NCBI RefSeq assembly: GCF_039654945.1
Contig: NW_027361869.1
Span: 1,302,001 to 1,366,000 of the forward strand
DNA: 64,000 nucleotides
DNA from: Dendrobates tinctorius
Lineage: Eukaryota
Reading direction: 5' to 3'
Shown here in pieces: positions 157-22,300 of this stretch. Numbering within the stretch: the stretch's first letter is position 1; every line of letters begins with the position of its first letter. The notes beneath the pieces were generated by a model. That model saw only the letters and a list, made by a program, of their open reading frames with translations. It was not told the DNA's origin and did not search any database. The position numbers and the translations under genes are program-made.

Positions 157-1925
157 TCAAATAAAAGCATCATTGATAATATTGAGGCCATAGGGACCAA
201 TTGTCTTTAATTTATAAATCCAATAGACCTCTTTTCTATTCAGTGCTTGGGTTCTATTGGAAACGTGTTCAGGGATGTGTTCTATAGGAAAAATGATAGC
301 TTTAGAAAAATCTCTTTGGTGAAATAAATCAAAGTGACGTGACAAACCGTGTTTTTGATACCCAGTTTTAGTGTTGTGTCTATGAGAGTTCATTCTACAG
401 TGAAGGGGTTGTGTGGTTCTGCCAACATACAATTTAGGACAAGGACAAAGGATGACATAGATGACAAAGGAAGACACACAGAACAGGTGGTTAGTGATGG
501 TGAATTTTTCTGAGGTGAATGGATGTGAAAAGATAAATGTATTATGAGCAATATTACTGCATAGGCTGCACCTGGGTTTCAGGCATCTGAAAATGCCTGG
601 TGTCAAGCCAGTGCAGTTATCAGGAGTACACTGGGTCAATCTGCTAGGGGCCAGATGGTTTTTTAGTGATCTGGCCTTCCTAAAAGTGACAGTAGGTCTA
701 TCAGGCAAAACTTTATTGAGTATTGGATCTTTTTTGATAATATACCAGAGGTCACCTAACATATTTTTTATCTCTTTATGTTGGGAGTTATAAGTAGTGA
801 TGAAGTTGGCCTGATAGTTATCATGTGCATCCTTTTCTTTAGATCTCTCACTTAAAAGAGTTTGCTGATTAAAATTTTTAAAAACATTATTAAAAGTAGA
901 ATGAACCAATTGGGAGGGGTATTTTTGAGCAAGGAATCTTCCCTTGAGGACCTCAGCTTGATTATTAAAATCCTCGTCCTCTGTGCAATTCTTTCGGATT
1001 CTCTGAAATTGATTATGAGGGATGTTAAAAAGCCATTTGGAATAGTGGCTACTCTTAAAATGGACATAACTATTGGAGTCAACATTCTTAAAAAAGGTTT
1101 TGGTATGAATTTTGGAATTTTTTATAAAAAAAGTGATATCAAGAAAGTCCATCTGGGTATTACTAATGTGGGGGGTAAATTCCAAACCCCATGTGTTATT
1201 TTGTATAGAAGAAATAAAAGCATCAACTGAAACGTGACTGGTGTCCAGGATTAAGAATAAATCATCAATGAATCTTCTATATAAAACAATACCCTCTAAA
1301 AATGAATCAATAGTAATAAAAGCATTCTCAAAGACCCCCATAAAAAGATTAGCAAAAGTTGGCGCGACCCGTGATCCCATAGCGGTGCCTCTGATCTGAT
1401 GATAAAAATCCCCCAAGAAAGTAAAAAAATTATTATGTAAAATAAAATCCATCCCATTAAAAATAAATTCCTTTTGAGGGTCAGACAGTCGACTGTCAGT
1501 TAAAAGAAATTTTTTAAAACAGCTCAAACCCAGTTGGTGATCAATGTTGGAATACAAAGCAGATACGTCAAAAGAAATAAAAACATAAGAATCTTTCCAA
1601 GGTGTGTTATTAGTTAAATTGATCAGTTGTGTAGAATCCTTTAAAAAACTAGGGAGCTGTGAGACATGATGCTGCATGATTCTATCTATGTAAAATGATA
1701 GATTACTGGTGAGGGAATCAATACCCGAAATAATGGGTCTTCCTGGTGGATTGATAGTATTCTTGTGTATTTTGGGTAAATGGTACAGGAAGGGAGTGGA
1801 GGGGTTCTTTACTGTCAAAAACTTTTTTTCATGGTCATTAAGAACCCCAGAATCATGCGCCTTTTTAATAAAATCATTGTAAAAAACAGTGGCTTGGGGG
1901 ATGGGGTCCTGGGGGATGGGTGAAT
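157..1925 (-). mobile_element. Penelope-like retroelement (Neptune-type), 5'-truncated ORF encoding reverse transcriptase + GIY-YIG endonuclease; left arm of an inverted pair
   Basis: RT motifs LPKIHK..PPGRPI, FDVSALYSNI, QIRGTAMGS..APTFANLFM and RRFIDD. Cys-rich linker CLKPRCSLC. Endonuclease VIYVILCPCPKLYVGRT..RMNSH..EVYWI..GLN. The frame stays open upstream of the track start at 1818 (..SPIPQDPIPQATVFYNDF..) up to the inversion junction at ~1925; there is no true ATG. Confidence 0.93.
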
Positions 1926-3336
1926 TTTATCTGACAAAAAATTTTATTCACCCATCCCCCAGGACCCCATCCCCCAAGCCACTGTTTTTTAACTGACAGT
2001 CGACTGTCTGACCCTCAAAAGGAATTTATTTTTAATGGGATGGATTTTATTTTACATAATAATTTTTTTACTTTCTTGGGGGATTTTTATCATCAGATCA
2101 GAGGCACCGCTATGGGATCACGGGTCGCGCCAACTTATGCTAATCTTTTTATGGGGGTCTTTGAGAATGCTTTTATTACTATTGATTCATTTTTAGAGGG
2201 TATTGTTTTATTTAGAAGATTCATTGATGATTTATTCTTAATCCTGGACACCAGTCACGTTTCAGTTGATGCTTTTATTTCTTCTATACAAAATAACACA
2301 TGGGGTTTGGAATTTACCCCCCACATTAGTAATACCCAGATGGACTTTCTTGATATCACTTTTTTTTATAAAAAATTCCAAAATTCATACCAAAACCTTT
2401 TTTAAGAATGTTGACTCCAATAGTTATGTCCATTTTAAGAGTAGCCACTATTCCAAATGGCTTTTTAACATCCCTCATAATCAATTTCAGAGAATCCGAA
2501 AGAATTGCACAGAGGACGAGGATTTTAATAATCAAGCTGAGGTCCTCAAGGGAAGATTCCTTGCTCAAAAATACCCCTCCCAATTGGTTCATTCTACTTT
2601 TAATAATGTTTTTAAAAATTTTAATCAGCAAACTCTTTTAAGTGAGAGATCTAAAGAAAAGGATGCACATGATAACTATCAGGCCAACTTCATCACTACT
2701 TATAACTCCCAACATAAAGAGATAAAAAATATGTTAGGTGACCTCTGGTATATTATCAAAAAAGATCCAATACTCAATAAAGTTCTGCCTGATAGACCTA
2801 CTGTCACTTTTAGGAAGGCCAGATCACTAAAAAACCATCTGGCCCCTAGCAGATTGACCCAGTGTACTCCTGATAACTGCACTGGCTTGACACCAGGCAT
2901 TTTCAGATGCCTGAAACCCAGGTGCAGCCTATGCAGTAATATTGCTCATAATACATTTATCTTTTCACAACCATTCACCTCAGAAAAATTCACCATCACT
3001 AACCACCTGTCCTGTGTGTCTTCCTTTGTCATCTATGTCATCCTTTGTCCTTGTCCTAAATTGTATGTTGGCAGAACCACACAACCCCTTCACTGTAGAA
3101 TGAACTCTCATAGACACAACACTAAAACTGGGTATCAAAAACACGGTTTGTCACGTCACTTTGATTTATTTCACCAAAGAGATTTTTCTAAAGCTATCAT
3201 TTTTCCTATAGAACACATCCCTGAACACGTTTCCAATAGAACCCAAGCACTGAATAGAAAAGAGGTCTATTGGATTTATAAATTAAAGACAATTGGTCCC
3301 TATGGCCTCAATATTATCAATGATGCTTTTATTTGA
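1924..3336 (+). mobile_element. Second, inverted Penelope-like copy; disabled by a ~375-bp internal deletion and a +1 frameshift
   Basis: Near-identical reverse complement of 157-1925. Begins ILSDKKFYSPIPQDPIPQATVF, then jumps at ~1990 to LTDSRLSDPQ. A T8 tract at ~2360-2367 (T7 in the left copy) splits ORFs 2040..2405 and 2266..3336. Confidence 0.92.
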
Positions 3337-3353
3337 TAGAAGAGGGGGAAAAG

Positions 3354-3990
3354 ATTTATTCTTCACACCACCACAGTCAAGCTTAATGGTCTGGTGGACT
3401 AATACCTTACATTTGCACTTCATAGTCTGCACTTGCACTTCATGAGCCAGGTTCTAATACCCCTTAAGGACTCACCTTTTTTAACCATAGCCTCATGATC
3501 CTTAGCACTCTGTTTCATATTTTTTGTACTTTTACATAATTTTATTTTTTCTTTTCTATATAGACTCTTATTGTTGTGTTTTCTATGTTTGTGATTATAT
3601 TTCATTGTTTTTATTCTTTACCATTTTTGACCTTTGCTTATATTGCTTTTTTTTTTTTTTTTCTAAATAAAGTGACAAACAACCCCTCAATTTATTCTTC
3701 ACACCACCACAGTCAAGCTTAATGGTCTAGTGGACTAATACCTTTCATTTGCATTTTATGAGCCAGGTTCTAATACCCCTTGAGGACTCACCTTTTTTAA
3801 CTATAGCCATGTTTTAACCCCGTGATCCATAGCACTCTGTTTTATATTTTAATTTTTTGTACTTTTACATATTTTTATTTTTTCTTTTCTATATATACTC
3901 TTATTGTTGTGTTTTTTATGCTTGTAATAAAGTTTCATTGTTTTTTTTTTTTTTGTTTTTTTTTTTACCTTTGCTGATTCTGTTTGACCC
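3354..3990 (+). repeat. Tandem ~335-bp duplication in the Penelope 3' untranslated (pseudo-LTR-like) region
   Basis: atttattcttcacaccaccacagtcaagcttaatggtct...atgagccaggttctaatacccct...ggactcacctttttt occurs at ~3354 and again, diverged, at ~3690, each followed by a T-rich tract. Positions 1-139 are the reverse complement of the first unit. Confidence 0.85.
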
Positions 3991-4042
3991 TGTATTGGCG
4001 CCTTTTTTCTCTATAAGTATGTTTCACTGTCTTCCAATGTAA

Positions 4043-4090
4043 TCTGCCCTGATGAAGTGAGCCAGCAGGCTCAGGAAACGCGTTGGCTGA
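4043..4090 (+). ncRNA. Minimal type I hammerhead ribozyme motif associated with the Penelope element
   Basis: Stem I GCC(4046-48)/GGC(4085-87); core CTGATGA(4049-55); stem II TGAGCC-AGCA-GGCTCA; GAAA(4075-78); palindromic stem III ACGCGT; GUU cleavage triplet (4082-84). AATAAA follows at 4090-4095. Confidence 0.82.
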
Positions 4091-4854
4091 ATAAAGAACC
4101 CTTTACTCTACCAGAAGCAAGCGCAGTCCTTATTGCACTTCCACGTCATTTCTGCATTTAGTTTTTATAGCATTGTGCAATTGCATGCAGGTAGGTAAGC
4201 TATCCCTGTTGCAAATGCATAGTCTAATTAGAGTATCAATTGTCTATACTTGCAGTGAATAAGAGTAGTAGTCTGTAAGTATCCGGGCTACCACCCCGCC
4301 GCCGCTTTGCCTAAGCTTTTTCCAAGTGGCATCCCTTAGAGGACTTTAACCTGTGATCATTTGATTGCTTATACTATATGCTACAATAACACAGTATTGC
4401 AGTAAATAGTGAAAACTTTTGTCTTCTATAGAGATTCACAGGAGGATAGAGATTACCTCGACAGGGGTCTTTAGCAGATCCCCAGCTGCCAAATTAATCC
4501 ATCGGTCCTCCATGATCATGTTGCTGGGGAATGATGGGAGCCGGTGCACAATGACACCTGAGAGTGTTCCATGTAAATGCCACTATCAGAGATTGACAAC
4601 ACAACAGCGTTTACATTTTTAAAAGTAACGACCTGTGCCGTGTTCTAGACGTGGCTGTTAACCATTTAGATGCTGCTGTGACATCGGCTACTTAATATAT
4701 ACCACCTGAGCCCCCTCCATACTTGAGGACCCCTTTCCAGGAAATGAATGTAAAGTTCTTTTGAGAGAAGGGGTTAATTACTTATAGTTAAAAAATATGT
4801 TTTTTTGTCTGCTTTTTAAATACATAATAATATGACAGATAGGTCCTCTGGAAC

Positions 4855-7931: not shown

Positions 7932-7968
7932 ACCCCTGATGAAGCTGGTTAGGCGAAACATGTTTGGG
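7932..7968 (+). ncRNA. Degenerate minimal hammerhead ribozyme motif
   Basis: CCC-CTGATGA(7936-42)-A-GCT-GGTT-AGGC-GAAA(7955-58), palindromic ACATGT stem III, then TT-GGG. Stem I has one extra T and stem II one missing base. Confidence 0.6.
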
Positions 7969-8749
7969 AGGCTATAAGCTATTAATTATAATAGCCAGTG
8001 CGGTTGTGTGAGGTCACTTACCTGCTTATACGTTATCACATATGAGATCTTGTTACAGACTGAGGTTACGCAGAGCGCAGAAGGTGGTATGAGTTTGTCA
8101 TCTGCGGCTGCGCTCTGCAGAGGAAGCAACCAAAGTGACAAAGCTCAGTACAATATATTGACCTTTGTCATCGTGGTCACTGCGTATGCAGAGCGCAGCA
8201 GCTGATAACATATTCCTCTAGACTTCTGCACTCTATACGGGCAGCAACCGAAATAAGAAATGCTCAGTATACGAATTGAGCTTTGTCATCTTGGTCATTT
8301 CCTATGCAGAGCGCAGCAGCCGATGAGAAGCTTATTTGGATTGCAGCACTCTTTATACGCAGCAGCAGAAATGACAAAGCTCAGTATAATGAATGGACCT
8401 TTGTCATCTTGATCACTGCCTATGCAGAGCGCAACAGTCGATAAACTCATCTTGACTGCTGAGCTCTGCATAAGCAAAGATAGAGATCACAGCAGATGAA
8501 TAGCCACTTGCCCTGCGTGATTCAATATTGTCTTCATTCACTGATAAAGACTGCTCTTAGCGTTTCTTTTTTTTACACTCAAGTTTTAATATTTTACAAT
8601 AATTAGATTTGTCCTAAATTATGGATATAGACACTCCCTATACCAGGGGCAGAGACACAATAATGATGGATACATGGTTGCAGCAAGATAATTTTTTACC
8701 CTCTCATGACCTCAAAAGTTCCCAAAGGGCATAAAAGTCAGTTAAATCA

Positions 8750-11975: not shown

Positions 11976-14900
11976 CTATAAAGATATATAGTGTTAGATA
12001 GATATAGATAGAAAGATAGATGTAGAAATAGATAGATATAGAGATAGATAGAAAGATTCATAGAGATAGATAGATAATAGAGATAGATAATAGACAGAGA
12101 TATACAGATATAATAATAATAATATAGACATATATAGATAGATATAGAGATAAATATATATAGATGGCTATAAATAAAAATAGATATAGAGATATATAAA
12201 GATAATAGATATAGAGATAGAGACAGATAGATATAGAAAGATAGATATAGAGATAGATATAGAGATATGTATAGAGATATGTATAGAGATATGTATAGTT
12301 AGAAAGAAAGATAGATATAGAGAGATATAGAGATAGATAGAGATAGCTAGATAGATAAATGGATAGATAGAGATAATAGAGATAATAGATAGATATAGAG
12401 ATAGATGGATAGATCAATAGATAGATAAAGAGAGAGATAGATAGATAGAGAGATATAGAGAGATATAGAGATATGGTGTTAGATAGAAAGATAGATATAG
12501 AGATAGATAGATATGGATATAGAGATAACAGATAGATAGATATAGAGATAATATATAGATAGCTATAGAGAGAGATATAGAGATAAATAGGTAGGTAGAT
12601 AGAGATAATAGATAGATATAGAGATAGAGATAGATATAGAGAGAGAGATAGATACAGAGATCGATAAATAGATAGAGATAATAGATAGAGATAGATAGAT
12701 AATNNNNNNNNNNNNNNNNNNNNNNNNNNNNNNNNNNNNNNNNNNNNNNNNNNNNNNNNNNNNNNNNNNNNNNNNNNNNNNNNNNNNNNNNNNNNNNNNN
12801 NNNNNNNNNNNNNNNNNNNNNNNNNNNNNNNNNNNNNNNNNNNNNNNNNNNNNNNNNNNNTATAGAGATAAATATATAGATAGATGGCTATAAATAAAAA
12901 TAGATAGAGATATATAGAGATAATAGATATAGAGATAGATAGATATAGAGACAGATAGATATAGAAAGATAGAGATAATAGCTAGATATAGAGATATGTA
13001 TAGAGATAGATAGATATAGTTAGATAGATATAGAGAGATAGAGATAGATAGAGATAGCTAGATAGATAAATGGATAGATAGATAGAGATAATAGAGATAA
13101 TAGATAGATATAATAGATAGATGGATAGATCAATAGATAGATAAAGAGAGAGATAGAGATAGATAGATAATGAGCTATAGAGATAGATATAGAGATATGG
13201 TGTTAGATAGAAAGATAGATATAGAGATAGATAGATAGATATAGAGATAAATATATAGATAGATGGCTATAAATAAAAATAGATATAGAGATATATAGAG
13301 ATAATAGATAGATATAGAGACAGATAGATATAGAAAGATAGATATAGAGATATATATAGAGATAATAGCTAGATATAGAGATATGTATAGAGATAGATAG
13401 ATATAGTTAGATAGATATAGAGAGATATAGAGATAGATAGAGATAGCTAGATAGATAAATGGATAGATAGATAGAGATAATAGAGATAATAGATAGAGAT
13501 AATAGATAGATGGATAGATCAATAGATAGATAAAGAGAGAGATAGAGATAGATAGATAATGAGCTATAGAGATAGATATAGAGATAGATGGATAGATCAA
13601 TAGATAGATAAAGAGAGAGATAGAGATAGATAATGAGCTATAGAGATAGATATAGAGATATGGTGTTAGATAGAAAGATAGATATAGAGATAGATAGATA
13701 TAGAGATAGATATGGATATAGAGATAACAGATAGAGATAGATATAGAGATAATATATAGATAGCTATAGAGAGATATAGAGATAGATATAGAGAGAAACA
13801 GATATAGAGATAGATAGGTAGATAGATATAGAGATAATAGATAGATATAGAGATAGATAGATAGATATAGATATAAAGATAGATAGAGATAGAGAGAGCG
13901 GTAGATATAGAGAGAGATAGATACNNNNNNNNNNNNNNNNNNNNNNNNNNNNNNNNNNNNNNNNNNNNNNNNNNNNNNNNNNNNNNNNNNNNNNNNNNNN
14001 NNNNNNNNNNNNNNNNNNNNNNNNNNNNNNNNNNNNNNNNNNNNNNNNNNNNNNNNNNNNNNNNNNNNNNNNNNNNNNNNNNNNNNNNNNNNNNNNNNNN
14101 NNNNNNNNNNNNNNNNNNNNNNNNNNNNNNNNNNNNNNNNNNNNNNGAGATAAATATATAGATAGATGGCTATAAATAAAAATAGATAGAGATATATAGA
14201 GATAATAGATAGATATAGAGACAGATAGATATAGAGATATATATAGAGATAATAGCTAGATATAGAGATATGTATAGAGATAGATAGATATAGTTAGATA
14301 GATATAGAGAGATATAGAGATAGATAGAGATAGCTAGATAGATAAATGGATAGATAGATAGAGATAATAGATAGATATAATAGATCAATAGATAGATAAA
14401 GAGAGAGATAGAGATAGATAGATAGATAATGAGCTATAGAGATAGATATAGAGATATGGTGTTAGATAGAAAGATAGATATAGAGATAGATAGATATAGA
14501 GATAGATATGGATATAGAGATAACAGATAGATATAGAGATAGATATAGAGATAGATAGATATAGAGATAATATATAGATAGCTAGAGAGATATAGAGATA
14601 GATATAGAGAGAAACAGATATAGAGATAGATAGGTAGATAGATATAGAGATAATAGATAGATATAGAGATAGATAGATATAGATATAAAGATAGATAGAG
14701 ATAGAGAGCGGTAGAGATAGAGAGATAGATACAGAGATCGNNNNNNNNNNNNNNNNNNNNNNNNNNNNNNNNNNNNNNNNNNNNNNNNNNNNNNNNNNNN
14801 NNNNNNNNNNNNNNNNNNNNNNNNNNNNNNNNNNNNNNNNNNNNNNNNNNNNNNNNNNNNNNNNNNNNNNNNNNNNNNNNNNNNNNNNNNNNNNNNNNNN

Positions 14901-16622
14901 NNNNNNNNNNNNNNNNNNNNNNNNNNNNNNNNNNNNNNNNNNNNNNNNNNNNAATATATAGATAGATGGCTATAAATAAAAATAGATATAGAGATATATA
15001 GAGATAATAGATAGATATAGAGACAGATAGATATAGAAAGATAGATATAGAGATATATATATAGAGATAATAGCTAGATATAGAGATATGTATAGAGATA
15101 GATAGATATAGTTAGATAGATATAGAGAGATAGAGATAGATAGAGATAGCTAGATAGATAAATGGATAGATAGATAGAGATAATAGAGATAATAGATAGA
15201 GATAATAGATAGATGGATAGATCAATAGATAGATAAAGAGAGAGATAGAGATAGATAGATAATGAGCTATAGAGATAGATATAGAGATAGATATAGAGAT
15301 AGATGGATAGATCAATAGATAGATAAAGAGAGAGATAGAGATAGATAATGAGCTATAGAGATAGATATAGAGATATGGTGTTAGATAGAAAGATAGATAT
15401 AGAGATAGATATAGAGATAGATATGGATATAGAGATAATATATAGATAGCTATAGAGAGAGAGATATAGAGATAGATATAGAGAGAAACAGATATAGAGA
15501 TAGATAGGTAGATAGATATAGAGATAATAGATAGATATAGAGATAGATAGATATAGATATAGATATAAAGATAGATAGAGATAGAGAGCGGTAGATATAG
15601 AGAGAGATATAGAGAGAGAGATAGATACAGAGNNNNNNNNNNNNNNNNNNNNNNNNNNNNNNNNNNNNNNNNNNNNNNNNNNNNNNNNNNNNNNNNNNNN
15701 NNNNNNNNNNNNNNNNNNNNNNNNNNNNNNNNNNNNNNNNNNNNNNNNNNNNNNNNNNNNNNNNNNNNNNNNNNNNNNNNNNNNNNNNNNNNNNNNNNNT
15801 ATAATAATAATAATATAGACATATATAGATAGATATAGAGATAAATATATAGATAGATGGCTATAAATAAAAATAGATATAGAGATATAGAGATAATAGA
15901 TAGATATAGAGACAGATAGAGATAGAAAGATAGATATAGAGATATATATAGAGATAATAGCTAGATATAGAGATATGTATAGAGATAGATATAGAGAGAT
16001 AGAGATAGATAGAGATAGCTAGATAGATAAATGGATAGATAGAGATAATAGATATAATAGATAGATGGATAGATCAATAGATAGATAAAGAGAGAGATAG
16101 AGATAGATAGATAATGAGCTATAGAGATAGATATAGAGATATGGTGTTAGATAGAAAGATAGATATAGAGATAGATAGATACAGAGAAAAGATATAGAGA
16201 TAGATAGATACAGAGAAAAGATATAGAGATAGATAACGGATAGATAAATAGATAGATAGGTATAGAGATAGATAACGGATAGATAAATAGATAGGTATAG
16301 AGATAGATAGATATAGATAGAGATATATATATAGATAAAGATTGATAGATATAGATGGTAGCTAGATAGATAATAAATATAGAGATAATAGATATAGAGA
16401 TAGAGTAAGATAGATAGATATAGAGATGGATAGATAGATATAGAGATGGATAGATAGATAGAAAGATAGATATAAAGATAGAGCGATAGATAGATATAGA
16501 AATAGATAGATATAGATAATAGATAGAGATAGAAAGATAGATATAAGAGAGATAGAGAGAGATATATATATATATAGAGATAGATAGAGAGAGAGACAGC
16601 TAGAGAGAGCGAGAGAGATATA
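11976..16622. repeat. Degenerate (GATA/GA/TA)n simple-sequence array with higher-order structure, interrupted by four N gaps
   Basis: Marker motifs ggctataaataaaaa and atatggtgttag each recur six times. Gaps at ~12704-12860, 13925-14145, 14741-14952 and 15633-15799. Confidence 0.95.
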
Positions 16623-17570
16623 AAAAAACAAACCACAATACTCACCTCTCCTCGCTCCCACGCTGATCCCGGCTTCAGTGTCAGGAGCTGCCCCCTCTGC
16701 CAGACACACAGCGGGTGCGCGATGTAGTGACGTCATCGCGCACTGGCTGTGAGCCAGGAGCAGAGAGGACTGAGGGCAGCGCCTTACAGCTGTAGTCTGC
16801 AGAGCGGCTTACTGGGCTGGGGGCGGGGCCTCTGGGGGTGGAGACTGTGAAATGAGATTCACTGCTTCGCGGTGAATATTCATTTCTCTTTAGCAGCGGG
16901 GACAGGGGCTCCTGCGTCCTGACACCCGCTGCTGCTCCGCTGGCAGGGGCCCCCATAGCAGCTGCATGGTGTGCGACACACCACTGACTGGGGGCCCCTG
17001 GAGCAGCGGGGGCCCTAGGCAACTGCTGGCCCTGTATGCCTGCAGGTGCCAGGGCCCACCGGAGAATCCACCGGTTCCCCGGTGGGCCAGTCCGAAGCTG
17101 AATACAAGAAGTCTAGAGCAGTTTTTCTTTATAAGAGCATGTTCACACTTTTGCAACAAGATTTTGTGCAGATTTGCTGCAGATTAGCAACTTCCAGCAC
17201 AACCCCTTTAAGTGCATGTGACTGCTAGAGCCCCTGATTAGCGGAATGTGGCGAAACCAGCATGGAAGTCCTGCTAGGAGTGTAGAAATCCATAGAGAAG
17301 GAGTATATTATTCTATATTTTCTACTTTTTTTTTTTTTTTTTTTTTTTTATTATTAATTCTCTACATCTGCAGCAGATCTGTAACAAAAGTGAATTTTTC
17401 TGCAAATGCAAAATACTTATGTCTATAGGAAAGATGGCAAATTGAAAACGACATGCACAAAAAAAAAAAAAAAAAAAAAAAAAAAACACCCCACCAGCAA
17501 AACTGACATTGATTGAAAAATCTGCAAAAACAGATCAAATTTGAGCCTTAAAACTAAAGCAGCACATAGA

Positions 17571-17607
<37 letters not shown>

Positions 17608-18126
17608 ATCCAGTTTGCCGGTACAAAAACTTGGACAGGAGTCAGTTCTCAGGGTTCCTGTTCACCACCTGAAGCAGAAGCAATTACCCCTTAAAAGTGG
17701 ATCTGTCAACAGATTTCTCCAATACAAAGTAATGCTAATACATTACTATTAGGTAGATCTCAGACCTGATGAGGCTGGTGTACTTACTTTGCAAAATACA
17801 TGTCAGAATAGTTGTAAGAGGTATTAAAATTAACATTTGATAACTGAAACATGCGACAACCAACGAATATGTAATAGTAACCCCCCAAAAATATTTAGAA
17901 AATAACGCCGAGATAATTTAGTAGAAAATATCTTTATTTCACAAAATCAGGTGGGTAACGACACGTTCTCAGTTTTATCTGACTCTCACGTCCTGTGGTT
18001 GAGCCATAACTAATAAGATACAGATTATATAGCAAAACCATCTGGCATCCAACACCATCCCAATCCCATGTGCCGGATATTGGATAATGCAGACGTATGA
18101 GGGTCTCCTTGTCAGCCATAAGAGGG

Positions 18127-18400
18127 TCACACGTCGGGCGATGACTGGAGGCTACTCTGAAATTTCTCCATTAGCAGCAGGCCACTCATGGCAAGACGTT
18201 GACAGTCTTCACTGGCGTCTGTCTCAATTAGATCTAAAAAAAAAAAAAGTAAGTACATCCAAGTTTATTTCATAGTTTCCAAACCACTAGGTTCAAATTG
18301 CATACCATAGAGATAAATTATTAAAAAATATAAAAATATATATCTCTTTCTGCATCTGCCACTAGGGGAAGCCAACTGTATACAGATTTTATTTTGTATA

Positions 18401-18455
<55 letters not shown>

Positions 18456-19299
18456 ATTTTTTTTTTTTATTTATTTAGTATTGATAGAAAGGAAGCAACA
18501 ACACAGAAAGAGATGGGCAGTGTGATTTGCGCCCCAGTCCAGACTTTTGTGGCAGGCAATTTTCACTTCTGCGCCCGTCAATCTTTCCCCAGCATCATGG
18601 GGGTGTCTAAATCTTACAATCTTACTATGACATTATAGGGTCTATTAAGTCCAAGAAGCAGCCAGGATTACCGGCACAGACGTAAAGACCACCTGTCATG
18701 GAGGATCGGACTGAATGTCTGACCGGGGCAGCGCGAATCCAACTGTATGGGATGCATCGAGACTTGCCGATGCTCTATGAGATTTTCTCATCCATCTCAC
18801 CTTCCAACCAGCGTTTCAGTTCCAGGACCTCTTCAGACATGTCGGTCATGATTCGCTCCCAGGGAACACTTAGAAGGATGGTGGAGACACAAAAGAGGAG
18901 ACCCTGTCTCACCGAGCTGTAAAACAAGACGTAAAATGAAGCCGATCACTTACAGGTGTATGCGTTGTGTATGGGCGATATACGGACTTAGTACGCACTT
19001 ACGGGTCAGTATGAAGGCGAAGGACCAAGACAAACTCCAGCAATGACTTCCCTATCTGAGGAGCAATCTGGGGAAACACAAGAGCAGGATGACTGCACCA
19101 GCCCCTCATATACACCTATACGAGCCGGATGTCACTCCCCTCAGCCCGCCCGTATCCCCCCACATAAGTCTACACTACCGTAGCATTAAAGGTCAGATGC
19201 ATCAGGATGCCCAGTGATTGAACTAGTCGTGCAAGGATCAGATGATCATCCCCAAGGAGGTCAAATGTCACAATGGGCCTTAAAAGAAGAAGAAAGAAG

Positions 19300-19331
<32 letters not shown>

Positions 19332-22300
19332 ATAAACTATATACCGCTGCAGCCAATCACTTGTCTAATGGTCATATGTTATATGAACAGGTGACGCTCA
19401 GAAGACAAGAGGGCAAAGTTCCACATCAAAGATGGCTCAAGGAAAAAAAGCTGCCAACAATCAAACTGCAGATCTTATTTTACAAGGCCTTAAAGAAGCA
19501 ATGTGTTTGGCTGCAGCGGTAATCAACTTTTTTCCTTGCACAAGTTTCCTTACTTATCGGACTGCACTTCAGCCAATGAAACAAAGTAAAAAAATCCGTA
19601 ACTTTTGGTGGAAAAATAAACATAAAACATACAATTTGTGTGGATAACTTACCTGTCATAATTCTGTATAAGTGGAAAGAAGAAGTGACCTACAACTGCA
19701 TGAAATCTGTTTGGTGTGGACACTGGGGTGGTACTTTTTTGACCCTACAATGAAAATAAAGACAGACCAGAACAATACACTGCACAACACTGAGTTATAA
19801 GCTTTTATTCTGAAGCCACCATTAGAGGAAGCTGCATACAGTATAGAGATAAGATTCTGCCTGCAGTCACCACTAGAGGGAGCTCCCTGTATACAGAGAT
19901 ACATGATAAGATCCTGTTTGCAGTCACCACTAGGGGGAGCTACCTGTATACAGAGATACACAAGATCCTGTCTGCAGTCACCACTAGGGGGAGCTCTGTG
20001 CATACAGAGACTGTGGATAAGATTTTGTCTGCAGTCATCACTAGGGGGAGCTCCATGTATACAGAGATACATGATAAGATACTGTCTGCAGTCATCACTA
20101 GGGGGAGCTCCATGTATACAGAGATACATGATAAGATACTGTCTGCAGTCATCACTAGGGGGAGCTCTCCGCATACAGAGATACAGGGTAAGATTATACC
20201 TGTCTGCAGTCACCACTAGGGGGAGCTCCTGTATACAGAGATTGAGGACAAGATCCTGTCTGCAGTGACCACTAGGTGGAGCTCTCCGCATACAGAGATA
20301 CAGGGCAAGATTATATGTGTCTGCAGTCACCACTAGGGGGAACTCTCTGCATAGACATTCAGGATAACTATCCCACACAATATTCATGTTGTATGCACCT
20401 TGGCGAAGCGTTTTGTCTTGCTTGCAATCCTCTCTTCTACAAGTTTCTTCCAGTCCACAGGTGCCTCGTCTTTCACATTCCTTTGTGTGCTAGTTGACGG
20501 CCGGACATCCCCCGTCGCTGCCTCTGGGACCTCCGCCAGCTCCCTAGCTGCAGTCACTAAAACCTGATGCAAGAGGAGAAGCCCCTGTCTAAATCCCGCC
20601 TACATCGCCACATTACCGCTGCAACCAATGTCTTTTGCATTGTTCCTAAGCATCGAAAATATCATGGAACTTTGCAAACTAAAATCGACTTTGGTTTTGA
20701 ACCTGCAGCTCCCATGCAGATCCATGCGTCTCCACGATAAACTACGTTAGATCCACCCTGCAGTCACACTGCCCCTCATCTGTAGGGGATAAATGGAAGG
20801 GAGTCAGACTGCAGGATCTGACGACACAGGGGTTTGTTTGTAGTCTGTCACCATGGAGATGTGACGACACAGGGGTTTGTTTGTAGTCTGTCACCATGGA
20901 GACACATCAGACTGCACAGGAGCTGTTGACACAGCGACAGAACAGCATAGGACGTACGTACATCTAATATATCTATCCGCTGTCGCAGGCTGTAGTTTAA
21001 GGAGTAGAATTCTCCGGTGAGATACTGAGACACCTGAAAGAAAAAAAAAAAAAAAAAAAAAGAAGAGGAAGGTTTAGTTGTATCAAGATGGCAGCTGCGG
21101 GGTTTTTCAGCAAGTTCTTAGGTGATAGAGCAACCCATCGTACCACCACGACTGCATGCGGACCACGCGGTCATAGACTGGCAATGGCTTTTAAAGGGGT
21201 CCAGAGGTGGATGGCGGCTGTACAGCACAGCTGGCAGGTGCCATGTGCGGAGAGGGCTCCGTCCCACTCATCAGCACCCCACGTAGGATGGCAGAAAGGG
21301 CTTGAAGGGGATTTTCCGGGCTGCACCAAAGCTTCCCGACTTCAGCCCATATATTAATGGATAAGTAAGGCGTGAAGACACTTACGGGTACAGGATCCAT
21401 AACCGTGACCGACACCATGGCTGCGTATCTCAGCTGTTGGAAATGTTCCACGCCGGGGCGGTCATTGAGGTGCAGGAGGATTTTGACAAGCTCGGTGCTG
21501 ACCTACCGGAGATGGAACCATTATTCTTCACCATGTTCCATACCTTCATGGTTGCGTTTCTCATTTTTCTTTTACGTCTTCTTCCACGGTCTCCATTTTT
21601 ACCTCTTTGGTAGCAGAAGGATTTGATCGAATCAATAAGGATACTGAGGCCATGGTTACCGCTAGTTTTTCCACATCTTCGGAAAGCAGCACTAAGGAAA
21701 TAGAAAATTATATTAAAAAAAAAAAAATATATCATAGCTAAACCTAGTTAATTTATGGTGCCAATAAAAAAAGTTTTTTAAGTTTATTAGAAAGTGTTTC
21801 TATTCTTCAGCACGTGCGAGATGTGTTTGCTGTCGGTGCATGACAACAACAGTCTTCGGCGAGTCCCTGCGGCTAAATGTCTTGCGCCTGTAGAACATGT
21901 TTCTTGAGAATGCCGAAGTCACGCGGTTAGCACTAGAGCATGCTTATATAACACCTTATCCCAGCACGTTCGCTCATCACTCGTCAGCACTTTCTTAATA
22001 GCGGGGAACAGACTCCTGGGACCATCATTAACCCTTAAGAAAATGCTGCACCTTCACAATTACCCCTTACCAGCCGCTGGCTGCAAGCGTCAGTGGTCCC
22101 CGAAGTCAGACCCCGACAATGAGAAAGTGATGTCATATCATAGCGATATAACATTAATTTTGAGGATAACAAAATATTTTTTTTTCTACCTCCGTGTGAT
22201 CACTCACCTTCCATACAGTCCCGGATATATGCTGGAATTTTGCTTTTCTTCAGCTCAGTGTCGGTGCTCATGTCATATGGAGACAGGTCATCATCACTGT

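What the first reader, a model, noticed from the sequence alone, without database searches (positions are those of the whole stretch)
4043..4095. Hammerhead ribozyme in the 3' tail of the Penelope element, probably active only as a dimer
Seen: every conserved box of a type I hammerhead in order (GCC-CUGAUGA-a-stem II-GAAA-CGC-GUU-GGC), ~710 bp downstream of the Penelope stop codon and immediately followed by AATAAA. Stem III is only the palindrome ACGCGT, too short to close intramolecularly. Known: Penelope-like elements carry minimal hammerheads in their pseudo-LTRs, and amphibian-type motifs with a palindromic stem III cleave as dimers. Inference: this motif processes the element's RNA and needs a partner copy. 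Two deviations could weaken this copy: the core-proximal stem II pair is G4057-G4074 instead of G-C, and the cleavage triplet is GUU.
Basis: partly seen in the sequence, partly recalled or inferred. Interest (0 to 1): 0.8.

Follow-up and report, generated by a model that had tools for sequence, protein, structure and literature searches.

The report
Penelope retrotransposon's minimal hammerhead ribozyme motif
This is a genuine copy of the small self-cutting RNA motif that Penelope-like jumping genes of frogs are already known to carry near their ends, here in a family-wide variant lacking one usually conserved base pair, so it is an ordinary member of a published class.

Summary
Observation confirmed. 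Window 4046-4087 (+) holds every box of a type I hammerhead in order. It lies 710 nt after the stop codon (3334-3336) of a 5'-truncated Penelope-like element (reverse transcriptase plus GIY-YIG-like C-terminus).

Rfam finds nothing. A covariance model built only from the same motif in related frog elements hits 4045-4088 at 34.9 bits, E about 1e-6. That is 20 bits above anything else in the 64 kb.

Eight distinct family versions from seven frog sources share these features:
- the core CUGANGA
- a bulged A after A9, and G10.1
- GAAA
- a self-complementary helix III (ACGCGU, once ACCGGU)
- fully covarying helices I and II (90% paired against 64% shuffled; 10 of 13 pairs changed on both sides)

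The "dimer only" reading fits the palindrome and a co-fold, but it is untested and there is no partner on this strand here.

GUU also occurs in two relatives. The G-G at 10.1/11.1 is unique among the eight. No G-to-C variant was listed in public contigs, so it appears to be the state of this abundant, young family.

This class was published in 2014 (about 9,000 in Xenopus tropicalis). The scan already holds 109 notes naming hammerhead and Penelope, at least eight on other DNA of this genome. Low interest.

The parts
4046..4048 (+). Helix I, 5' strand (GCC)
   Evidence: Pairs with 4085-4087. Helix I covaries across relatives: GGC/GCC, GAU/AUC, GAC/GUC, GCCC/GGGC, AACC/GGUU.
4049..4055 (+). Catalytic core box C3-A9 (CUGAUGA)
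   Evidence: The CUGA-GA positions are invariant in alignment A2.
4056..4056 (+). Unpaired A between A9 and G10.1
   Evidence: Invariant in all 8 family versions. It is a published hallmark of Penelope minimal hammerheads (PMC4209133).
4057..4074 (+). Helix II. G4057/G4074 is a mismatch at 10.1/11.1; six pairs 4058-4063 with 4068-4073; loop AGCA 4064-4067.
   Evidence: Five of six helix II pairs change on both sides among relatives. Position 11.1 is C in 5, U in 2, and G only here. The variants listed inside the motif in sibling contigs lie between 4062 and 4067, at the top of helix II and in loop II.
4075..4077 (+). Core G12 A13 A14
   Evidence: Invariant in A2.
4078..4083 (+). Helix III as a 6-nt palindrome ACGCGU (A15.1 to U16.1). 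It cannot close on itself and can pair with a second copy.
   Evidence: Palindromic in all 8 versions; ACCGGU in the Pristimantis locus. The co-fold dimer has -36.9 kcal/mol against 2 x -15.2, with a swapped double-hammerhead topology.
4084..4084 (+). H17 (U). The predicted cleavage is 3' of this base, between 4084 and 4085.
   Evidence: This follows from hammerhead numbering. H17 is A in 4, C in 1 and U in 3 of the 8 versions. Cleavage was not tested.
4085..4087 (+). Helix I, 3' strand (GGC)
4090..4095 (+). AATAAA hexamer two bases after the motif
   Evidence: The hexamer is common in this window (117 sites). Loose ends of other families in the same genome also read (ACC)AATAAA right after 4087. 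Function not shown.
4036..4156 (+). Highly repeated terminal module that carries the motif. The 3' end of the insertion lies at about 4153-4159.
   Evidence: Summed k-mer depth is 13,142-21,332 against 6.3 in the flank 4193-4286. Exact-match contigs cover 4036-4153, 4036-4156 and 4042-4156 in three runs. Unrelated loose ends follow 4153-4159.
3337..4035 (+). 3' untranslated region, with a 336-bp tandem duplication (3354-3689 and 3690-4025) that ends before the motif
   Evidence: One contig joins 3353 directly to 3690 and runs on to 4071.
1987..3336 (+). 5'-truncated Penelope-like ORF (reverse transcriptase, linker, GIY-YIG-like end) whose tail holds the motif
   Evidence: ORFs 2040-2405 and 2266-3336. 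It is the inverted twin of the minus-strand ORF, with a weak RVT_1 hit.
157..1818 (-). Inverted sister copy of the same ORF (553 aa open). Its own tail runs off the window start.
   Evidence: RVT_1 at 31.3 bits, above the cut-off. GIY-YIG at 20.6 bits, E 5e-4, just under the cut-off. Frog homologues at 42-49% identity carry RVT_1, DUF8422 and HTH_animal, and some carry GIY-YIG.

Best explanation
The motif is a true minimal type I hammerhead of the kind Penelope-like elements carry in their terminal repeats. It is inherited by descent, because related frog elements have the same motif in the same place. It sits in the last ~120 nt of the insertion, about 70 nt before the insertion's 3' end.

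On its own RNA it cannot form helix III, so a lone copy should not cut. If it cuts, it does so between 4084 and 4085. That would need either two copies pairing their ACGCGU palindromes into a swapped double hammerhead, or folding help from the element's own protein. Partner copies could come from tandem read-through transcripts of full elements or from other transcripts of this abundant family.

The family-wide G at 11.1 removes the usually conserved G10.1-C11.1 pair and probably lowers activity.

Shown here: sequence, homology, covariation, palindrome conservation, repetitiveness.
Inferred: dimer requirement, RNA processing role, reduced activity.
For: - All boxes are present in order.
- A model built from relatives alone hits 4045-4088 at 34.9 bits, E about 1e-6.
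- A stem-blind pattern finds the same architecture in Rhinoderma, Hyla (two copies flanking the element, inside 742-nt identical terminal repeats), Pristimantis, Xenopus laevis, Ranitomeya and two Logan assemblies.
- Covariation: 90.4% of cells are paired against 64.5% shuffled (0 of 500 shuffles reach it). 10 of 13 pairs change on both sides. Slid controls give 33-51%.
- The helix III palindrome is kept through a CGCG to CCGG change.
- The minimum-energy dimer is the domain-swapped double hammerhead, 6.5 kcal/mol below two monomers.
- Sibling contigs run continuously from the 3' UTR into the motif (records 12, 13, 25).
- The published hallmarks are met: extra nucleotide after A9, long helix II, short helix I, palindromic 15.2-16.2 (PMC4209133).
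Against: - No Rfam hammerhead hit, even at E up to 10.
- G4057/G4074 breaks the pair that the 2014 paper calls highly conserved.
- There is no partner copy on this strand in the window. The only other hammerhead-like site (7932-7969) has a non-complementary palindrome.
- Published minimal Penelope hammerheads cut poorly in vitro even as dimers (PMC4209133).
- In the Anolis element, cleavage needed the protein and was not required for insertion. RNA-seq there showed no ends at the cut site (PMC11167929).
- All public runs available here were contigs, so no RNA ends could be read.
Confidence: 0.75

Rival explanations
1. The motif is a homologous hammerhead that is catalytically inert in this family. 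The change at 11.1 killed or crippled cleavage, and the motif is simply carried along because cleavage is not needed for Penelope retrotransposition. It might also serve as a protein-binding or structural RNA element.
For: - G at 11.1 occurs only here among 8 versions.
- The family is nevertheless abundant and young. Exact-match contigs have very high k-mer depth and the palindrome arms are 100% identical over 1122 nt.
- In vitro, Anolis hammerhead mutants insert normally (PMC11167929).
- Naiad elements thrive without hammerheads, and the authors consider that hammerheads may merely parasitise Penelope elements (PMC8557442).
Against: - The rest of the core, the bulged A, both helices and the palindrome are intact in exact-match copies at high depth.
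- Position 11.1 already tolerates U in two relatives.
- An A4056-G4074 pair with G4057 bulged could substitute. This is my own inference and is untested.
Confidence: 0.3
2. The 4036-4156 module is a separate short non-autonomous hammerhead element (retrozyme-like monomer or solo terminal repeat) that merely abuts the Penelope tail, not part of that element.
For: - Several contigs, exact and diverged, begin at 4036 and end at 4145-4156.
- The module's k-mer depth is 3-5 times that of the upstream 3' UTR.
- Non-LTR retrozymes of Xenopus are related to Penelope terminal repeats (bioRxiv 10.64898/2026.07.22.740005).
Against: - Contigs of several sibling copies bridge 4036 from the 3' UTR into the motif (records 12, 13, 25).
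- Relatives have the motif downstream of the same ORF.
- 5' truncation alone makes 3' ends the most abundant part.
- There is no tandem array here.
Confidence: 0.1
3. The motif is a chance match to the hammerhead boxes.
For: The relaxed descriptor hits 9% of shuffled windows. There is no Rfam hit.
Against: - The independent model gives E about 1e-6.
- The motif has the correct strand and place in a Penelope tail.
- Homologous motifs with covariation occur in seven other family versions.
- Other families in the same genome match only 4045-4087 (record 29).
Confidence: 0.01

Closest known systems
Minimal hammerhead ribozymes of metazoan Penelope-like elements (Cervera and de la Pena 2014, PMC4209133)
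   Same: - Type I topology and location in the element's terminal non-coding repeat
- Extra nucleotide between A9 and 10.1
- Long helix II and short helix I
- Tiny palindromic helix III implying dimers
- Thousands of dispersed copies in a frog genome
   Different: The G10.1-C11.1 pair, described there as highly conserved, is G-G in this family. Helix III has the 2-nt palindromic extension (ACGCGU) rather than the barest ACGU form.
Poseidon element of Anolis carolinensis (PAc) hammerhead (Frangieh et al. 2024, PMC11167929)
   Same: - The hammerhead lies in the terminal repeat of an RT plus GIY-YIG element.
- Genomic insertions end a short distance downstream of the cut site: about 85-92 nt there and about 70-75 nt here.
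- The protein is a distant homologue (30% identity).
   Different: There the motif overlaps the ORF start. Cleavage there was shown to need the protein and to be dispensable for insertion in vitro. Nothing of that kind has been tested here.
Newt satellite 2 and other amphibian type I hammerheads and non-LTR retrozymes (PMC7229834; bioRxiv 10.64898/2026.07.22.740005)
   Same: Type I motif with a weak palindromic helix III that works in tandem dimers. Evolutionarily linked to Penelope terminal repeats.
   Different: Those are tandem arrays of ORF-less monomers with tertiary loop contacts. Here a single motif sits at the end of an ORF-bearing element, and the local tandem duplication does not include it.
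Rfam Hammerhead_1 (RF00163)
   Same: Same catalytic core and type I topology.
   Different: The Rfam models do not score this motif at all at E up to 10. I infer that the missing helix III, the bulged A and the mismatch are the reasons.

Membership tests
Hammerhead ribozyme, type I | Core boxes CUGANGA ... GAAA ... UH in that order, with the open ends in helix I | tested here: met
Hammerhead ribozyme, type I | Helices I and II supported by compensatory changes | tested here: met
   All 4 helix I pairs and 5 of 6 helix II pairs change on both sides. 90.4% of cells are paired against 64.5% shuffled.
Hammerhead ribozyme, type I | A closed helix III | tested here: inconclusive
   It cannot close within one strand: ACGCGU would leave a 2-nt loop. 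It is formable only between two copies. The palindrome is conserved in 8 of 8 versions.
Hammerhead ribozyme, type I | G10.1-C11.1 pair next to the core | tested here: not met
   G4057 faces G4074. Relatives have C in 5 and U in 2.
Hammerhead ribozyme, type I | Match to a curated Rfam hammerhead model | tested here: not met
   No hit at gathering score or at E up to 10.
Hammerhead ribozyme, type I | Site-specific self-cleavage 3' of H17 | not testable with these tools
   Only contigs were available, so no RNA ends could be read.
Penelope-element minimal hammerhead (PMC4209133) | Lies in the terminal non-coding repeat of a Penelope-like element | tested here: met
   It lies downstream of the RT/GIY-YIG ORF in the terminal 120-nt module. 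In the Hyla relative the motif is inside both 742-nt terminal repeats.
Penelope-element minimal hammerhead (PMC4209133) | Unpaired nucleotide between A9 and 10.1; long helix II; short helix I; palindromic 15.2-16.2 | tested here: met
   A4056; 6 pairs plus a mismatch; 3 pairs; CGCG.
Penelope-like element, endonuclease-bearing | Reverse transcriptase domain | tested here: met
   RVT_1 at 31.3 bits against a cut-off of 29.6 on the 553-aa minus-strand ORF.
Penelope-like element, endonuclease-bearing | C-terminal GIY-YIG endonuclease | tested here: inconclusive
   PF01541 at 20.6 bits, E 5e-4, below the 22.6 cut-off. Many homologues carry PF01541.
Penelope-like element, endonuclease-bearing | Partial-tandem or inverted 5'-truncated insertion structure | tested here: met
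   Head-to-head arms 11-1132 and 2361-3482 are 100% complementary. This structure is described for these elements in PMC8557442.
Non-LTR retrozyme | Tandem array of ORF-less monomers, each with a hammerhead | tested here: not met
   There is one motif only. The 336-bp duplicated unit ends before it.

The most novel reading that the evidence does not exclude
A recently amplified frog Penelope family carries, in essentially all its copies, a hammerhead that has lost the G10.1-C11.1 pair. One possibility is that the hammerhead tolerates a shifted geometry, with an A4056-G4074 pair and G4057 bulged. The other is that this family is a natural knock-down showing that ribozyme cleavage is dispensable for Penelope proliferation in vivo.
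Probability: 0.3. Interest if true: 0.45.

Novelty: new member of a known kind. Interest (0 to 1): 0.2.

Why it matters
It matters little for discovery. Hammerheads in Penelope terminal repeats, their dimer-type helix III and their abundance in frog genomes have been published since 2014, and this scan has already noted many in the same genome.

The useful residue has three parts:
- A clean comparative set of eight covarying versions, with a working covariance model that finds motifs Rfam misses.
- Evidence that the helix III palindrome itself is under constraint.
- A young, abundant family fixed for a mismatch at 10.1/11.1. This could serve as a natural test of whether cleavage is needed for Penelope spread, a question the literature leaves open.

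Tried and rejected
- Rfam at gathering score and at E up to 10, on the whole window and on 261 nt around the motif: no hammerhead hit. The only local match was a meaningless SNORD126 alignment.
- My strict descriptor (no insertion, 10.1-11.1 paired) does not find the motif. Only the relaxed one does.
- Single-strand folds are unremarkable: z -0.93 for 4038-4098 and z -1.17 for the 4036-4160 module. The monomer minimum-energy fold pairs part of the core with CGUU, which is an inactive fold.
- No other copy of 4036-4156 exists in the window.
- Searching earlier findings by sequence gave a blank, which means nothing.
- A PDB sequence search with the ORF found nothing.
- The supplement of the 2014 paper with the Xenopus families is not held, so I could not check whether a G-G family is already drawn there.
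- Papers found for G10.1/C11.1 gave no data on a G-G mismatch.
- Loci L001, L004 (short flank), L011 and L012 show no convincing motif.
- AATAAA as a polyadenylation signal: the hexamer is too common here to carry weight, and relatives from other species lack it at that place.
- Expression and cleavage in vivo: all 24 runs offered were contigs, and none is on record as RNA.

Full report
**1. What is in the sequence**

On the + strand, 4046-4087 reads as follows.
- GCC, then CUGAUGA, then A.
- Helix II spans 4057-4074. It has six pairs (4058-4063 with 4068-4073), loop AGCA, and G4057 facing G4074.
- GAAA, then CGCG, then UU, then GGC.

In hammerhead numbering, U4084 is H17. A4078 to U4083 (ACGCGU) is a perfect palindrome. 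As a hairpin it would leave a 2-nt loop, so helix III cannot close within one molecule. AATAAA lies at 4090-4095, two bases after the motif.

**2. The element it belongs to**

The ORF 2266-3336 ends with a stop at 3334-3336. It is the inverted twin of a 553-aa open frame on the minus strand (157-1818).
- The arms 11-1132 and 2361-3482 are 100% complementary.
- The minus-strand ORF passes Pfam's RVT_1 cut-off (31.3 bits).
- Its last 207 residues give a GIY-YIG hit just under the cut-off (20.6 bits, E 5e-4).
- The word search finds frog proteins at 42-49% identity with RVT_1, DUF8422 and HTH_animal domains and, in many, GIY-YIG. An Anolis carolinensis protein matches at 30%.

Reverse transcriptase followed by GIY-YIG, in head-to-head 5'-truncated copies, is the published signature of Penelope-like elements (PMC8557442).

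The 710 nt between stop and motif include a 336-bp tandem duplication of the 3' UTR (3354-3689 and 3690-4025). The duplicated unit ends near 4022, before the motif, so only one hammerhead lies on this strand. One public contig joins 3353 directly to 3690 and runs on to 4071 (record 25). If that contig is not an assembler shortcut through the 39 shared bases, the usual distance is about 375 nt.

**3. Is it more than chance?**

Rfam gives no hammerhead hit at gathering score or at E up to 10. My relaxed descriptor allows the extra base and a mismatched first pair. It finds this site alone in the window, but it also hits 9% of shuffled windows. The decisive evidence is comparative.

I fetched the DNA around eleven homologous proteins. 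I then searched with a pattern that demands only the core boxes, the extra A and a C[CG][CG]G-U-H tail, and no stems. It found the same architecture in these sources:
- Rhinoderma
- Hyla
- Pristimantis
- Xenopus laevis
- Ranitomeya
- two Logan assemblies

In Hyla the motif occurs twice, 5632 bp apart, inside terminal repeats that are identical over 742 nt and flank a two-ORF element.

On the alignment of eight distinct versions (A2):
- 90.4% of cells pair, against 64.5% after shuffling (0 of 500 shuffles reach it).
- 10 of 13 pairs change on both sides.
- Sliding the partners by 1-3 columns drops pairing to 33-51%.

A covariance model built from the seven relatives without the window (R1) hits window 4045-4088 over its full length at 34.9 bits, E about 1e-6. 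The next hit scores 15.3 bits. The motif is real, and it is homologous to the hammerheads of related Penelope elements.

**4.

- The extra A after A9 is invariant in all eight versions. It is a stated hallmark of the class (PMC4209133).
- GUU is shared with the Xenopus laevis and Ranitomeya versions. H17 is A in four, C in one and U in three.
- The G-G at 10.1/11.1 is the one true oddity. Position 11.1 is C in five relatives, U in two, and G only here. The 2014 paper lists the G10.1-C11.1 pair as highly conserved.

**5. Is G4074 private to this copy?**

I laid contigs of four public runs on 3300-4700 at 80% likeness.
- Summed k-mer depth over 4052-4145 is 13,142-21,332, against 6.3 in the single-copy flank 4193-4286.
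- Contigs identical to the window over 4036-4153, 4036-4156 and 4042-4156 occur in three runs from three studies.
- The variants listed inside the motif lie between 4062 and 4067, at the top of helix II and in its loop.
- No G-to-C change at 4074 is listed.

The table is truncated (35 rows not shown), and contig depth is not a copy number. I therefore state only that G is the state of the great majority of this abundant family.

Other families in the same genome match the window only over 4045-4087. Unrelated sequence lies before 4042/4045 and after 4087 (record 29 and the loose ends). The hammerhead itself is therefore the unit conserved between families. Unrelated loose ends after 4153-4159 place the 3' end of the insertion about 70-75 nt past the cut site. 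This is comparable with the Anolis element, where reverse transcription starts 85-92 nt past it (PMC11167929).

**6. How it most likely works**

A lone transcript cannot form helix III. Its minimum-energy fold pairs part of the core with CGUU. Two copies co-fold 6.5 kcal/mol below two monomers. They form the domain-swapped double hammerhead, in which each core uses the other copy's helix I 3' strand and the palindromes make helix III.

Conservation of self-complementarity through the CGCG to CCGG change in Pristimantis is what a dimer helix predicts.

The following count against certainty:
- No partner lies on this strand here.
- Published minimal Penelope hammerheads cut poorly even as dimers (PMC4209133).
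- The Anolis motif needed the element's protein, was dispensable for insertion in vitro, and left no RNA ends in RNA-seq (PMC11167929).
- Hammerhead-less Naiads proliferate well (PMC8557442).

This family is young and abundant yet lacks the 10.1-11.1 pair. It is therefore either weakly active, active through a shifted geometry, or inert and carried along. I put about 0.75 on a true Penelope hammerhead whose activity, if any, is dimer-dependent or protein-dependent and reduced. Within that, about 0.3 falls on effectively inert.

**7. Comparison and novelty**

This is the class described by Cervera and de la Pena in 2014, who counted about 9,000 such motifs in Xenopus tropicalis. The link to retrozymes is treated in PMC7229834 and in a 2026 preprint. 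Earlier notes of this scan record many hammerhead-bearing Penelope fragments in the same frog genome (109 notes). They include a follow-up that called a palindromic Penelope fragment with hammerheads a known by-product of integration. The present motif is a new member of a known kind. Only the fixed G-G is mildly unusual.

**8. Limits**

- No raw reads were available, so expression, RNA ends and cleavage are untested.
- The supplement with the published Xenopus families is not held.
- The covariance model covers only the 42-nt motif.

Noticed in passing
window 7932-7969 (+): A second minimal hammerhead-like motif: ACCC, CUGAUGA, extra A, a 3-bp helix II, GAAA, CAUG, UU, one extra U, then GGG. 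Model R1 gives 15.3 bits, E 0.12. Its helix III (ACAUGU) is also a palindrome but is not complementary to ACGCGU, so it is not a partner for the 4046 motif.
   Followed up: partly
window 3764-3992 (contigs of runs X5, X6, X8): One contig in X5 differs from the window by 21 changes, almost all T to C. X6 and X8 show an A to G excess. This one-directional pattern looks like A-to-I hyperediting of double-stranded RNA. It suggests that these runs of unknown kind are RNA and that the inverted Penelope copies are transcribed.
   Followed up: no
window 3354-3689 and 3690-4025: The two tandem units of the 3' UTR are only 78-94% alike, while the two inverted ORF arms are 100% alike. The duplication is therefore older than the palindrome or was copied from a different template. 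A 17-nt filler (3673-3689) sits at the junction.
   Followed up: partly
window 1880-1991: The centre of the head-to-head palindrome (46-nt perfect arms, 20-nt loop) produces a dozen spurious sub-threshold microRNA-precursor matches in Rfam.
   Followed up: no
L003 804-2282, L004 90-1655, L005 44-1603, L008 672-2375, L011 3-1454: The related frog elements carry a first ORF of about 480-570 aa, with no Pfam family on record, directly upstream of the RT ORF. Both window copies are truncated before that region.
   Followed up: no
L013 5440-5482 versus L013 564-606: In the Ranitomeya locus the downstream copy of the hammerhead has the core box CUGACUA (G8 replaced by U), while the upstream copy keeps CUGACGA. 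This is an example of a decayed copy.
   Followed up: partly
window 4334-4429: An unrelated repeat family lies next to the insertion. About 65 contigs of the DNA run lie on it, with shared differences at 4380, 4383 and 4389.
   Followed up: no
window 12001-16000: GC content is 0.21 and GC skew 0.86 over 4 kb, with AATAAA recurring at intervals of roughly 380 to 900 bp. It looks like a satellite array and is apparently covered by another note of the scan.
   Followed up: no
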